The notes under the pieces are model-generated. The model searched no databases and was not told the DNA's origin. It saw only the letters and a program-made list of their open reading frames with translations. Both the position numbers and the translations under genes were made by a program. Shown here one piece after another: positions 5,228 to 12,094 of a stretch of 64,000 nt of DNA (positions within the stretch are counted from its first letter, which is position 1; every line of letters begins with the position of its first letter). Source of the stretch: Takakia lepidozioides (taxonomy: Eukaryota; Plantae; Bryophyta); assembly GCA_030704615.1 (NCBI GenBank), contig CM060734.1, positions 44,392,001 through 44,456,000 on the forward strand. The letters run 5' to 3'.

Positions 5228-7005
5228 TACCGTAGTGGGAAGGCTGAAGTGCCGAATATTTATAACAAAACACTTTGGCACAACTTAACCCTTAAGTTCC
5301 CAAGCGACCTGAATCTGGTCACTTTGAATTTGCAGTTCGACCTAATTTTTGCAGATCTAATCTGATGGGGCCCACTCATGAAGCTTTAATGACAAGGGGT
5401 TTGTCTCGAGTACGATGCAAAAAACAAAATTGAAAAAAAACAAAAGCTACTACCTACGAAAAATATCTTAGATCTCTCATTTACGTTTTGGGCCCGAAAA
5501 GGGTTTGTTGACCGCTGATGTGGCAGGTAAACAAGCCCAAAACAGATTGCACTCCAAGCCATTTTTGGCAGAAAATTAGCAATTTTAGAAAAAGCCTTGT
5601 GGTTTGTGAGCATTACAGACACACATCCACCATTGGCTTTTAAAAAATTTGTAGAAAAAGATTTCAACCCCTATGTAATTGCATGCAAAGCAATCATAGT
5701 CTGAACGAGGGTGGCGACCCCACATGCAGTCCATGCGCCAGAAAACAGTTGGACCTGCAATTTATTGGGGTCATAGCCACTCCACTATTGATTTGGAAAT
5801 GGTGGGTCTTGGGGCAAGCAAAATTGGATAAAGCTAGGTTTTGATTTGGTCAAACCAATTTCTTTCTCACTTTTTCTTTGGGACATGATATTTGAGGTCT
5901 GGGCCACCGTTGTAATCTCACAATTTCCACTGTGGACTTGGCTCATTTAAGGTAGCATGTTTGGTTTTCCTTGCTTCCACCCAGATATCATGTTTGTGTT
6001 CATGATATGCATGCTATGTCTTTGTCACTACCTGAGAGAATCACTTATGGAATTCCATCCTCCAATTCGACCTATATCTAACTTAGTTGTTGTGGATTAT
6101 TTTAAAATAATGTTTGCTAGTGTAGCTCCCTCAGTGCTCTAATGCCAAATCATCTATTCGTTATCATCTTCCTTGTGCTCTATCTGAAGATGATAAACTT
6201 TCTCTTGCCTCCCCTTATGACAAACTTGTTGAGATTCTTGTCACTTTGAAAGCACCCACACGATCGACAATATGCTAATTATAGAGTTATTTAAGGCTAA
6301 GTGGTTAACCAAAGAGAATTTTTCCTTAACATGGCCGATGACATCTTCACTTGACACTCGGCTTGCGTCTCTCACAAGGCCCCTCATTCCTGGAACACAA
6401 TCACCCTACCATTTCCAAGTGCATTTGCAACCCAAGTGGAGTCCATAAAACTTCATGTGTGCTTACATATGTCCAATTAGTTGCGAGGCCAGAATTTCCC
6501 TACAGGGTCATGTGACATAAGGATGTGAAGATGCTTAAGAACAATATACGTTGGGCTGCTCATGGCTTGGACTGGCATGCAACAGTCTCATGGATAGGGC
6601 CCGCCATTGTCATCTGATATTATTAGAAGTTATTATACTATGAATGAAAACACATGCAGAAAGTATGAGTGCATATGTGCATATAGTGCCTCTACAAGGG
6701 AATGATTCCATTAGTCATGAATGGTATCATGAAACCATAAAAGCATAATACCATTCCCATCCCAAATGGAAGGAAAGCATGCATGCAAGGTTTGAGATGG
6801 AAGTTGGATACCCACTTTGAAAGAAATATGGATATGCACTCTGTTGCATTCATAAAATTTCCAAAGCATTGAGAACGAACCATATAGATGAAGCATGTTA
6901 CGTAATAAATACAGTAGGATTTCAACTGTTGGCACCAATGTCATTGTGGTCAAATAAGAAACAGGGGAATGTACACAGGATGCATCTTTCCACAATAACA
7001 ACTTT

Positions 7006-8570
7006 TCACCAGTAATCCCCACAAGAACAAACCCCATCTTCGAAGTGATGAAAGCGGTTCGCGTCCCGTACAACAATTGCTCGGCCAAAAATCTTTGAGA
7101 TGAATTTGGTGGAGGTGTGGCAGTCACCACACACCCGAAGATTGTTGAGGAGATAGAGAGGCGTCCTAGGGGTCGTGCTGATGAGCCCAAAACCAATGGC
7201 CAGCTTCTCACTGTGGTGACAAAGAGAAAATTCATTTTGCTCCATGTAATACAAAGTGTGTGTAAGGCACATACCCTGCCTCCTTCATCTGCCCAGACAA
7301 TCTTCTCAGCTTAGCATGGATTTCACTAATTTTGGGATGCAATTTGTCATCTACAACTGTAAAGGTGTGCACCATGTTCCCAACCTCAATACAGCAGCAA
7401 CCTGACTCCTTTTTAACCCCTCTGACCTTCATCGTCTCTCTCACCTTTGCACTATCGTTCCACCTGCCAGCTGCAGCATAGATGTTTGATAGCAACACAT
7501 AAGTCACAGCATCTTGGTCATCCACTTAGAATAGATGTTGCCGCACGTTCAGCCATCTCCACATTGCCATGGCTTCTGCAGGCACCAAGCAAGGCCATCC
7601 ACACCACTGCATCTGGTTCCATTGGCATTTTAGTATTGAGGTCCTCTGCTTCATCCAATTGCCCGCACGTCCAAGAAGGTCCACCATGCAGCCAAAGTGC
7701 TTTACCGTCGGAGTCACACCGTGATCTGGACTCAGGGAATCGAAGTAGCATCTTCCTTCATCCAGTAGGCCAGCATGGCTGCATGCAGAGAGAACATATA
7801 GAAAGGCACTACTGAAGCCTTCCTTTTGCATTCGTTCCACTAGTTGCAAGACCTCCCTATGACAACCATGCTGGGATCATCGCCCTCCACGACAGCATAC
7901 CTCGTTCAGCCATATTGTCAGATACTCCCTTTGCATCCTCAATGCTGACATTTGGCATACATGTCCACCAGGGCGTGTGTCCAGAATGACATATGGTACA
8001 ATTCCGGGTTTGATGATGACCTCTTTGCCATTTTCCAGGCCTGCCAGGCTTGCACAAGCACACCAGAAGCACTGGGGTCAGAAAAGTATTCACTCCACAG
8101 TTTCTCCTCATCTCTGTTACCTGTTTCTGGATACTTTCCTATTGTCACATTGGCACATTTGGCATATATGTCCACGAGGGTATTGCTCAGACTCACATCT
8201 GGTACAATTCCAGCTTTGGCGATGCAACCATGCACCTCTTTGCCCTTCTCCAGGGCTGCCAGGCTTGCACACGCACTGCATTTAACACACACAAACATTA
8301 TATGTGGTTGGGCTTCACCCCTTCCCCGATCATTTGCTCATAGGTCTCCAAAGCCTCTATCCAGCGCCCCTACTGCGCATACCCTGCAAGCATCGTGTTC
8401 CATGACACCACATATCGTTTAGCCATATTGTCGAACACTCCCTTTATACATGTCCACGAGGGTATTGTTCAGAATGACATGTGGTACAATTGCAGCTCTG
8501 ACAATGTCGCCATGGAGCTCTTTGCCGTTCTCCAGAGCTGCCAGGCTTGCACATGCATTGCAAACTATCA
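7006..8570 (-). pseudogene. PLS-class PPR protein with E domains and DYW deaminase domain, frameshifted
   Basis: Fragments in several frames: [125 protein letters not shown]. Confidence 0.92.
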
Positions 8571-8714
8571 AAGGTTCACTCAACCAGTAACTTGCAGAAA
8601 TCAACATGAAAACTTAAGGCCGATTTCGATAAGAGGGAAAAATAGGGTGAAATGTTTTGAAGAAGGTGCCTTCATTAGCAGTGCCTGATTTTATCAATTG
8701 TGCCGCTGCCGCTG

Positions 8715-9570
8715 CTGATAGCAACACATAAGTCGCGACATCTTGTTCATCCCACTTGAGAATAGATGTTGCAGCATGTTCAGCCATCTCCACATTGCCA
8801 CGGATTCTGCAGGCACCAAGCAAGGCCCTCCAAACCATAGCATTTGGTTTCATTGGCATTTTGTTAATGAGCTCCTCTGCCTCATCCAATTGCTCCATGT
8901 GTCCAAGAAGGTCCACCATGCAGCCAAAGTGCTTTACTGTCGGAGAGACACCATGATCTTGACTCAGGGAATCAAAGTAGCGTCTTCTTTCATCCAGTAG
9001 GCCAGTGTGGCTGCATGCAGAGAGAACACATATAAAGGTGATACTGTCCGGCTTCAAGCCTTCTGTTTGCATTCCTTCAAATAGTTGCAGGGCTTCCCTA
9101 TGACAACCATGTTGGGCATATCCTGCAATCATAGCATTCCAGGAACACTCCCTTTGAATCTTCAATGCTCCCACATTTGGCATACATGTCCACAAGGGTA
9201 CTGTGCAGAATAACATCTGGTGACGATGTCACCATGGACCTCTTTGCCCTTTTTGAGAGTTGCCAAGCTTGCACATGCCTTGCAAACACAAACAAACGTG
9301 ATGCGGTCGGGCTTCACCCCTTCCCACATCATCTGCTCAAGGGTCTCCAAAGCCTCCATCTCGCGTCCTTGTTGTGCATATCCTGCAATCATCGCGTTCC
9401 ATGACACTTTGTTCAGCCATATTGTCGAACAACCCCTGTGCATCTTCAATGCTCCCACATTTTTGCATACATGTCCACTAGGGCAGTGTTCAGAATGACG
9501 TCTGGTACTATCCCAGCTTCGACGATATCACCATGGACCTCTTTGCCCTTTTCCAAGGCTTCCAGGATAT
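8715..9570 (-). pseudogene. Second PLS-PPR fragment (P-L-S plus E domain, truncated before DYW)
   Basis: [64 protein letters not shown]; several frameshifts; paralogous to about 7490-7880. Confidence 0.9.
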
Positions 9571-10572: not shown

Positions 10573-10794
10573 CTATCCATTCAGGAAATCATTGATCAGT
10601 TCATGTTGTTCACTCCCTCTTCATGGTAAGTACAAACCTCAAACCACAAACCAGGTAATGGAAGCCGCATAAACAAAAGAAACTCGACCTCCAAGCACTC
10701 CACCAAAAAAAAAAACATATCTATAAACAATCCAAACAGTCATAATCATCAGACATTGTCATGTGGTGTAGCTCTGCATTATGTCCTTCTGAAG

Positions 10795-10903
10795 CCCATC
10801 CGCGCATCATTTGCTCGTAGGTCTCCAAAGCCTCCATCCCACACCCGTGCTGTGCATATCCTGCGATCATCGCGTTCCATGACACCACATTTCGTTCAGC
10901 CAA
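10795..10903 (-). pseudogene. Isolated PPR motif fragment
   Basis: [33 protein letters not shown]. Confidence 0.85.
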
Positions 10904-12094
10904 ACTTCTTCACCTCATACTTTAAGAGAAAGCCACACCTTGCGATTACGGTTGTCCCTCCATCGTGAAGGATCTTTAAAGAACTCATGCCAGCTCTGCT
11001 CCGTGCAAAATCCGCAGCATCAACATTTTGACAAGTTCCTTTACGAAGGGGTGCTAGTGAGCTTTCAACAACATTCATGCTGGTCGCTTTGGGCTCCATT
11101 GGACTCTCCACAACGAGGACATACCATGTCCAAATGTACATAGATGCTAAACCAGCTTATGTCTGCAGTGTGGAGATTTTGGAGTGGTCTCTGAAAACGA
11201 GCAGGAGCAGCTAAGCAACCGACACGATTTTGGAAAGAGGGCATTCATGGGATACCATGTAGCATGTCGAGGATGAAGGCATGCATGGGGGATGAGGGCG
11301 ATGCCATGCATGAGGGTAGGATGGGAGGAGGGATGGGGATGCGGGAGAGGGCACGTCTCATGTCCTGGCAGCGGGAACATGAGGCGCGGGAGGGCGTGCC
11401 GCGCGGCAGCGCCCGCGCGGTGTGCGGGGGTGGGGTGGCGGGGGGGGTCCACGCTGGCTGAACCGGCTCCCTCGCATTCAACTCCAGGGCCCATCTAATG
11501 CTTGGCCATTTTTTGGTATGTCATGCATAAATGAGCTGGGCCCAATGCTATAAGGCTGGAATCTCTGGATGATTCTTGGTAGGTTTGTAGGGGCAATTTA
11601 CTGCAGCTGGGTACCCAAAATTGGTAAAAAGTCAAAAAAGGGCTTGGGAACTTAAGGGTTAAGGAAATTTCTAGATTTTACGGCAATGCCACGATGAGAT
11701 TTTAAGTAATTCGGCGGTGACTCCCAGCATGAACTTGCTCTATCTACTGTACCAGATGTGGTAAGAGAATTATGTACCAACAGTCAGTAGCTTAGATGGT
11801 TAAGTGCACCACCCAGATGATTCTGGGGTCAAATCTTGCTATTGACGGGTGTGGTATGGTTCCTGGGCGGAAAGTTTCTGGAATTTCGGCAGTTTTTCCT
11901 AAATTTTCACTTAATTATTAGTCATATTCATTTCTAATTATTTAGTGCTGGATCAGCCTTCCCACTACGGTAGCCCAAAAGCAACTACTGCTCAAGGGAG
12001 TGCGTAAGAAAGAAGCAGAATTGGTTTAGGTCCACTACAGCCAAGAAAGTTCTAACATGAAGCGATTTACATAGCATACAATAGACAGTCCATC

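What the first reader, a model, noticed from the sequence alone, without database searches (positions are those of the whole stretch)
5285..11662. Candidate Pack-piggyBac: TTAA-flanked 6.4-kb element carrying a mosaic of host gene fragments
Seen: perfect 17-bp TIRs starting CCC and ending GGG, TTAA on both sides, and clean interruption of a smaller MITE, which independently supports the boundaries. Inside are co-oriented pieces of at least two unrelated host gene families (PPR-E-DYW, ARF1 with introns) plus short unexplained fillers, and no recognisable transposase. Established: TTAA plus CCC...GGG ends define piggyBac; gene-capturing Pack elements are described mainly for MULE, CACTA, hAT, Harbinger and Helitron; piggyBac is rarely reported in land plants. 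Inference: a non-autonomous piggyBac lineage that captures and shuffles genes in this plant. I do not know of a description of this.
Basis: partly seen in the sequence, partly recalled or inferred. Interest (0 to 1): 0.88.

Follow-up and report, generated by a model that had tools for sequence, protein, structure and literature searches.

The report
Gene-fragment-carrying piggyBac-type transposon in a moss
A 6.4-kb jumping element in a moss-lineage plant has the end signature of piggyBac transposons and carries only broken pieces of host genes, a combination I found no description of; I could not see other copies or link it to a transposase.

Summary
Perfect 17-bp inverted ends (CCC...GGG) sit at 5289-5305 and 11642-11658, each flanked by TTAA. 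The 6,370-bp unit splits a 371-bp MITE that has its own perfect 20-bp ends.

Inside, all on the minus strand, are:
- three frameshifted PPR pieces, one running through E/E+/DYW;
- three ARF1 exons that keep their splice sites, with one exon missing;
- about 2.4 kb of unexplained non-coding DNA.

I found no transposase, no nested TIR element and no canonical Helitron end.

TTAA plus CC...GG ends meets the published terminal rule for piggyBac and fails Kolobok's (RR...YY). A second, unrelated TTAA/CCCTTAA-ended MITE lies at 47067-47843.

Three things are not shown: other copies of this element, an empty site, and a piggyBac transposase with matching ends. So "a lineage that captures genes" remains inference, and a later Helitron-like insertion into a small element is not excluded.

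Earlier notes of this scan report the same kind of thing on other DNA of this genome: autonomous piggyBacs, TTAA/CCCTTAA MITEs, and a 14.5-kb cargo-laden unit.

Verdict: a real element and a probable Pack-type piggyBac, a new variant of a known kind.

The parts
5285..5288 (.). left TTAA target-site duplication
5289..5305 (+). left terminal inverted repeat, 17 nt, starts CCCTTAAG
5306..7008 (.). left non-coding stretch of unknown origin. No recognisable coding in six frames. GGGCCC motifs at 5368, 5490 and 6597. It may be DNA that lay downstream of the PPR parent gene (inference).
7009..8571 (-). PPR fragment a: 3' part of a PLS-class PPR gene through E, E+ and DYW. The frame changes near 7242 and near 7876-7946, so it is a pseudogene.
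8716..9565 (-). PPR fragment b: paralogous 3' part cut off inside the E motif, about 79% identical in DNA to 7487-8059 of fragment a
9675..9755 (-). ARF1 last coding exon (YIQST...NIANK), preceded by an AG acceptor
10281..10403 (-). ARF1 exon (DEL...RQRHW) with AG acceptor and GT donor; Pfam Arf 3.1e-10
10505..10580 (-). ARF1 exon (IGFNVE...GGQDK). The exon that should follow it (about 40 aa) and the first about 48 aa of ARF1 are absent.
10781..10906 (-). PPR fragment c, about one motif, 81-84% identical in DNA to 8319-8425 and 9318-9419
10907..11641 (.). right non-coding stretch of unknown origin. It includes a G+C-rich part (57% G+C over 11001-11500) and GGGCCC motifs at 11487 and 11538.
11642..11658 (-). 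right terminal inverted repeat, 17 nt, ends ...CTTAAGGG
11659..11662 (.). right TTAA target-site duplication
5228..5284 (.). left part of the interrupted host MITE (371 bp once the insert is removed); perfect 20-nt end TACCGTAGTGGGAAGGCTGA
11663..11972 (.). right part of the interrupted host MITE; the MITE itself sits in a LINE 3' tail

Best explanation
This is a non-autonomous cut-and-paste DNA transposon of the piggyBac type, 6,370 bp long. It has 17-bp ends that start CCC and end GGG, and it inserted at a TTAA inside a small MITE, duplicating that TTAA. It encodes no transposase, so a piggyBac transposase made elsewhere in the genome would have to move it. That enzyme would recognise the ends and probably the palindromic GGGCCC motifs clustered within about 200 bp of each end. 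Its interior is a DNA-level mosaic of dead host gene pieces, all in one orientation: three PPR fragments from at least two paralogues, and part of an ARF1 gene with introns but lacking one internal exon. This is the anatomy of a Pack-type element. Shown: the ends, the TTAA duplication, the interrupted MITE, the cargo and its decay, and the absence of a transposase. Inferred: the piggyBac partner, the role of the GGGCCC motifs, and that the element acquired the fragments before moving here as one unit.
For: Ends and TTAA. The MITE halves join only if the whole 6,374 bp is removed. Only two copies of the TIR exist in the window, so this is not two small elements bracketing resident DNA. The ends meet the published piggyBac rule: TTAA target, TIR of 14 +/- 2 bp, first six bases C[C/A/T][C/A/T][T/G/A][T/A/G][T/G/A] (PMC5381638). 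They fail Kolobok's 5'-RR...YY-3' rule (PMC9587614 and PMC6004289). A second, unrelated element at 47067-47843 also has TTAA on both sides, a CCCTTAA start and GGGCCCAC 27 bp inside its left end. TTAACCCTTAA is over-represented, 7 against 1.0 expected. Four of the window's 18 GGGCCC sites lie within about 210 bp of this element's ends. Cargo. The ARF exons keep their GT/AG borders, so they were copied from genomic DNA, not from mRNA. No nested TIR+TSD pair and no hairpin+CTRR end lie inside. Repbase classifies non-autonomous DNA transposons by exactly these terminal and TSD features (PMC4455052). Leads not tested here: earlier notes of this scan report piggyBac transposases in this genome.
Against: I have one copy only. 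I found no other member, no empty site and no transposase with matching ends. The TIR is absent from the metagenome collection, and the organism's sequences are not in the protein collection. By established knowledge, not tested here, piggyBac excision is seamless and needs no gap-filling synthesis. The usual Pack route, abortive gap repair with template switching, is therefore not the obvious one, and another capture route would be needed. An earlier first-reader note reports a Helitron-like family carrying PPR-DYW pieces in this genome, which makes a nested insertion plausible. The origin of about 2.4 kb of the interior is unknown.
Confidence: 0.6

Rival explanations
1. The TTAA element was originally a small cargo-free MITE. 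The PPR/ARF mosaic belongs to a different gene-capturing transposon (Helitron or Helitron2-like, which leave no target duplication) that later inserted into it, here or at an earlier locus.
For: Mosaics of co-oriented gene fragments are typical of Helitrons. An earlier first-reader note in this genome (s1-479590) describes a Helitron-like family that brackets PPR-DYW fragments. The 1.7-kb and 0.7-kb stretches on either side of the cargo have no assigned origin.
Against: No hairpin followed by CTRR-T is present on either strand inside the element, and there are no internal inverted ends of 12 nt or more with a target duplication. That scan would miss imperfect hairpins and Helitron2-type ends.
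Confidence: 0.22
2. The ends belong to a different superfamily. Candidates are another TTAA-targeting group (Kolobok or a Sola group), or a TA-targeting Tc1/mariner-like element whose ends are A-CCC...GGG-T, which would give the same sequence at this one site.
For: At a single insertion, TTAA + CCC... and TA + ACCC... cannot be told apart. A follow-up note reports Sola2 elements in this genome (s1-451587). No transposase was linked to the ends here.
Against: Kolobok ends are RR...YY, whereas these are CC...GG. Both TTAA-flanked elements in the window have T before and A after the central TA, on both sides. Under a TA-only target that would happen by chance roughly once in a hundred times (my estimate from base frequencies). 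A 3-bp TWA duplication (PIF/Harbinger) would make the ends asymmetric.
Confidence: 0.1
3. This is not a mobile unit at all: the 22-nt palindromic pair is a chance match or an assembly artefact.
For: Only one copy was seen, and no reads could be laid on it.
Against: A perfect 22-nt inverted pair is not expected by chance. The two flanks reconstitute one MITE with perfect 20-nt ends. Four DNA runs of one sample hold about half of the stretch's sampled words, but that sample may be the assembly's own source.
Confidence: 0.03

Closest known systems
piggyBac-like elements and their non-autonomous derivatives (for example MER85/MER75-type MITEs; the PBLE survey in PMC5381638)
   Same: TTAA target duplication, short TIR starting CCC and ending GGG, first six bases fitting the published motif, palindromic subterminal motifs, and a size within the reported 1.7-8.5 kb range.
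   Different: [quoted passage not shown] The interior holds host gene fragments instead of a transposase or a simple deletion remnant.
Pack-TYPE transposons of plants (Pack-MULE, Pack-CACTA and others; PMC8903248, PMC6379663, PMC13317346)
   Same: A non-autonomous TIR element whose interior is a mosaic of exon and intron pieces from unrelated host genes, co-oriented and pseudogenised.
   Different: The superfamily: the word piggyBac does not occur in the two Pack/gene-capture papers checked for it, PMC8903248 and PMC13317346. Pack-MULE and Pack-CACTA leave 9-10 bp or 3 bp duplications, not TTAA. The gap-repair capture model fits piggyBac's seamless excision poorly.
Kolobok / T2-MITE
   Same: TTAA target-site duplication, and many MITE derivatives.
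   Different: Kolobok ends are 5'-RR...YY-3' (AGGRR in T2-MITEs). This element has 5'-CC...GG-3'.
Gene-capturing Helitrons
   Same: Co-oriented mosaic of host gene fragments, including intron-bearing pieces.
   Different: Helitrons have no TIRs and no target duplication. No canonical Helitron end was found inside the element.

Membership tests
piggyBac superfamily | 4-bp TTAA target-site duplication | tested here: met
   TTAA at 5285-5288 and 11659-11662. The second element at 47067-47843 also has TTAA on both sides.
piggyBac superfamily | short TIR (about 14 +/- 2 bp, range 5-19) beginning C[C/A/T][C/A/T][T/G/A][T/A/G][T/G/A], i.e. CCC...GGG ends | tested here: met
   17-nt perfect TIR beginning CCCTTA. 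The rule is from PMC5381638.
piggyBac superfamily | an autonomous partner with the same ends that encodes a DDD transposase (Pfam DDE_Tnp_1_7) | not testable with these tools
   None found among 61 ORFs of the window, and no other DNA of this genome could be reached. Earlier notes report piggyBac transposases elsewhere in this genome; those are leads only.
piggyBac superfamily | precise excision restoring a single TTAA (empty site) | not testable with these tools
Pack-TYPE transposons | TIR-bounded, no transposase, interior made of fragments of host genes | tested here: met
Pack-TYPE transposons | parent genes elsewhere in the genome, and more than one copy or evidence of mobilisation | not testable with these tools
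   The organism's genome and proteins are not in the searchable collections; the best PPR hit is 60% identical.
Kolobok | TTAA duplication together with 5'-RR...YY-3' termini | tested here: not met
   The termini are CC...GG. The rule is from PMC9587614 and PMC6004289.
Helitron (as a nested carrier of the cargo) | 3' hairpin followed by CTRR, insertion between A and T, no TIR | tested here: not met
   No perfect hairpin of 6 bp or more followed by CTRR-T on either strand of 5289-11658. This is a weak negative: imperfect hairpins and Helitron2-type ends would be missed.
Tc1/mariner (Stowaway-like) | TA target duplication only | tested here: inconclusive
   One site cannot separate TA+A...T from TTAA. 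Both TTAA-flanked elements in the window show the full TTAA on both sides, which argues against TA-only targeting.

The most novel reading that the evidence does not exclude
An early-diverging moss lineage hosts active piggyBac transposons whose non-autonomous relatives habitually pick up and carry host gene fragments (Pack-piggyBac). Because piggyBac excises seamlessly without repair synthesis, this would point to a gene-capture route other than the abortive gap repair invoked for Pack-MULE and Pack-CACTA.
Probability: 0.3. Interest if true: 0.8.

Novelty: new variant of a known kind. Interest (0 to 1): 0.58.

Why it matters
A broad survey reports piggyBac as absent from plants (PMC5381638). 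In plants, gene shuffling by Pack-type elements is described for other superfamilies; two gene-capture papers I checked never mention piggyBac. A piggyBac-type element carrying host gene pieces in a bryophyte would extend both pictures. It would also raise a mechanistic question, because piggyBac's seamless excision leaves no gap in which foreign DNA is normally copied. Since piggyBac is a major gene-transfer tool, natural plant-adapted versions and their cargo tolerance have practical interest. This single locus is one instance, not proof of a capturing lineage.

Tried and rejected
That left no depth, no junction reads, no RNA evidence and no empty allele.
- Metagenome scan for the TTAA+TIR 21-mer: 0 hits.
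- Exact-protein look-ups of three window ORFs: none on record.
- Homologue search with the 200-aa chimeric PPR ORF, to find sibling copies or a parent gene: the best hit is 60% identical, so this organism is not in that collection.
- Search for an intact host MITE or empty site in the window: none.
- tRNA and Rfam scans of the element: nothing.
- Pfam on 61 window ORFs for a piggyBac transposase: none.
- Nested TIR+TSD and Helitron-end scans: nothing.
- Similarity between this element's ends and the second TTAA MITE beyond CCCTTAA and GGGCCCA: none, so they are separate families.
- The ARF exons were read one by one; I built and searched no joined spliced model.
- I had no tool-given piggyBac protein, so I could not query for moss transposases, and I did not type one from memory.
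- The terminal and TSD rules of the Sola groups could not be found in the paper library.
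Full report
OBSERVATION. TTAA (5285-5288) is followed by CCCTTAAGTTCCCAAGC (5289-5305). Its perfect reverse complement lies at 11642-11658 and is followed by TTAA (11659-11662). The repeat finder reports a 22-nt, 100% complementary pair once TTAA and one flank base are included (I3). Allowing 3 mismatches, the TIR occurs only at these two sites plus one 3-mismatch hit, and no shuffle out of 100 reached three matches.

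Apart from LINE copies lying in opposite orientation, the window holds three perfect inverted pairs of 17 nt or more. They are this one, the pair that bounds the host MITE, and one further MITE at 12129-12798. Block shuffles give 0.23 such 17-mer pairs. No duplication longer than TTAA is present in the flanks.

SETTING. The flanks reconstruct a nested series. Outermost is the 3' tail of a LINE family that recurs across the window. It has 44-bp units ending ...ggtgctttataacgtccgcgg, followed by gcccaaaagcaactactgctcaaggga. Inside that tail sits a small element with perfect 20-nt inverted ends at 5228-5247 and 11953-11972, whose outermost bases are TA. With the insert removed and one TTAA kept, it is 371 bp long. 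The TTAA element sits inside this MITE.

The two MITE halves abut only if the entire 6,374 bp is taken out. The interior therefore is not resident DNA bracketed by two small elements. Only two TIR copies exist, which also argues against a composite of two MITEs. No uninterrupted copy of the host MITE is in the window, so this support for the boundaries rests on the 20-nt ends alone.

INTERIOR. Everything recognisable lies on the minus strand.
- PPR similarity to ten moss, lycophyte and other PPR proteins covers three stretches.
  - 7009-8571: fragment a, which runs through E, E+ and DYW.
  - 8716-9565: fragment b, cut off inside the E motif.
  - 10781-10906: fragment c, about one motif.
- Pfam scores are DYW_deaminase 2.5e-35, E motif 5.6e-16 and PPR 8.4e-18.
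- Fragment a changes reading frame near 7242 and again near 7876-7946, so it is a pseudogene.
- Fragments a and b are about 79% identical in DNA over roughly 590 bp, with sub-blocks at 89-90%. This suggests two paralogous sources or an old duplication.
- ARF1 is represented by three exons: about 10580-10505, 10403-10281 (Pfam Arf 3.1e-10) and 9755-9675.
  - They have GT donors and AG acceptors, and a split Trp codon at the last intron.
  - The exon encoding about 40 residues between the first two is missing, as are the first about 48 residues.
  - The exons carry several replacements in an otherwise very conserved protein.
  - This is therefore a partial, rearranged copy of genomic DNA, not a retrocopy.
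  - I read the exons one at a time and neither built nor searched a joined spliced model.
- The remaining about 2.4 kb (5306-7008 and 10907-11641, the latter with a 57% G+C part) shows no coding signal in six frames and no tRNA or Rfam match.
- There is no internal inverted pair of 12 nt or more with a target duplication. There is no hairpin followed by CTRR-T on either strand.

WHICH SUPERFAMILY. TTAA duplications define piggyBac and Kolobok. Kolobok ends are 5'-RR...YY-3', AGGRR in the Xenopus T2-MITEs (PMC9587614, PMC6004289). The present ends are CC...GG, so that defining feature is not met.

The survey of 157 piggyBac-like elements gives a TTAA target and a TIR of 14 +/- 2 bp. Its first six bases are C[C/A/T][C/A/T][T/G/A][T/A/G][T/G/A]. 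The survey also reports frequent, sometimes palindromic, subterminal repeats and sizes up to 8.5 kb (PMC5381638). CCCTTA, 17 nt and 6.4 kb all fit.

Repbase assigns non-autonomous DNA transposons by these same terminal and TSD features (PMC4455052).

One site cannot separate TTAA + CCC... from TA + ACCC...T. However, the window holds a second, unrelated element (47067-47843, 769 bp between its TTAAs, TIR 13/14, starting CCCTTAAAGGACGA) that also has the full TTAA on both sides. The 11-mer TTAACCCTTAA is found 7 times (one mismatch allowed) against 1.0 expected.

Both elements carry GGGCCCA near an end. In the 6.4-kb element, four of the window's 18 GGGCCC sites lie within about 210 bp of its ends. 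I read these as candidate transposase-binding sites. That is inference, and I noticed the motif after the fact.

WHAT COULD NOT BE TESTED. I could not test the transposase link, the copy number or the empty site.
I worked beside those places from then on and sent none of their letters to a search tool.
- The runs table shows four DNA runs of one sample holding 43-51% of the sampled words. That sample may be the assembly's own source. Two possible RNA runs hold 9-13%. None of these runs could be laid.
- The TIR 21-mer is absent from the metagenome collection.
- Window ORFs are not on record as gene products.
- The best homologue of the chimeric PPR ORF is 60% identical, so the organism is not in the protein collection.
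- No DDE_Tnp_1_7 domain was found in 61 window ORFs.

ORGANISM. An intronless ABCC2-like ORF (40245-44831) is 75% identical to Physcomitrium, 74% to Sphagnum, 72-73% to Ceratodon, 69-70% to liverworts and about 65% to seed plants. This points to a moss-lineage plant about equally distant from Sphagnum and the Bryopsida. Combined with the many DYW genes, it suggests an early-diverging moss. The species itself is coded and not established.

EARLIER NOTES OF THIS SCAN (leads, not evidence). The same genome has notes on other DNA.
- Many TTAA/CCC-ended elements, including CCCTTAA-ended MITEs.
- Several piggyBac transposase-bearing elements, two of them examined by follow-up agents.
- A '14.5-kb cargo-laden piggyBac unit that split a 97-bp MITE'.
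- A Helitron-like family bracketing PPR-DYW fragments.
- A Sola2 element with a captured fragment.
The first three raise the prior for the piggyBac reading. The Helitron note raises the prior for the nested-insertion rival. Of all these, I could reproduce only the presence of a second TTAA/CCCTTAA MITE, in my own window.

MECHANISM. Shown: a TIR-bounded, transposase-free unit lies at a duplicated TTAA, with dead host gene fragments inside.

Inferred:
- a piggyBac transposase moves it in trans;
- it arrived here as one unit;
- the fragments were acquired at the DNA level.

How they were acquired is open. Established knowledge of piggyBac, not tested here, is that excision proceeds through hairpins and TTAA overhangs and is repaired without synthesis. 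The template-switching gap repair proposed for Pack-MULE and Pack-CACTA therefore has no obvious entry point. Candidates are double-strand-break repair inside the element with filler capture, replication template switching, or a nested Helitron-type insertion.

LITERATURE. In the paper library, no paper joins piggyBac with bryophytes or Takakia as a transposon. The one hit uses the word 'piggybacking' in its everyday sense. The Pack-TYPE survey and a 2026 review of gene capture in plants do not contain the word piggyBac. Large cargo on piggyBac is known from the fish Teratorn, a fusion with a herpesvirus, which is a different thing (PMC6431247).

VERDICT. The classification as a piggyBac-type non-autonomous element with Pack-like cargo is the best reading (about 0.6). 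A nested gene-carrying transposon is the main rival (about 0.2). The claim of a gene-capturing lineage is unproven from this single copy.

Noticed in passing
window 47067-47843: Second TTAA-flanked element, 769 bp between its TTAAs. Its TIR is CCCTTAAAGGACGA / CCCCTAAAGGACGA (13/14), with GGGCCCAC 27 bp inside the left end and no coding. It shares only the CCCTTAA start and the GGGCCCA motif with the 6.4-kb element.
   Followed up: partly
window 5228-5284 + 11663-11972: Host MITE of 371 bp with perfect 20-nt inverted ends whose outermost bases are TA (Stowaway-like?), inserted in a LINE 3' tail. By eye it contains a tRNA-like stretch near 11787-11850, but ARAGORN calls no tRNA there.
   Followed up: partly
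window 12109-12811: Another MITE-like element. It has perfect 23-nt inverted ends at 12129-12151 and 12776-12798, and a further inverted 11-mer just outside them.
   Followed up: no
window 48147-48290: One TTAA at 48267-48270 is shared by two outward-facing CCC ends (...TTTTAGGG-TTAA-CCCGGGTATC...). No partner end for either is in the window. These may be abutting TTAA elements or chance.
   Followed up: partly
window 585-688, 18727-18821, 19867-19995 and about ten other sites: 44-bp units (...aaatggtgctttataacgtccgcgg...), often in tandem, mark the 3' tails of a LINE family that is scattered and nested through the window.
   Followed up: no
window 40245-44831 (-): A single uninterrupted 1,529-codon ORF for an ABCC2-type transporter, 75% identical to moss proteins. 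Apart from a missing N-terminal about 100 residues relative to its homologues, it appears intronless, which is unusual for this gene family.
   Followed up: no
window 2265-3293 (+) and 13498-14310 (-): Open frames of 343 and 271 codons with no Pfam family.
   Followed up: no
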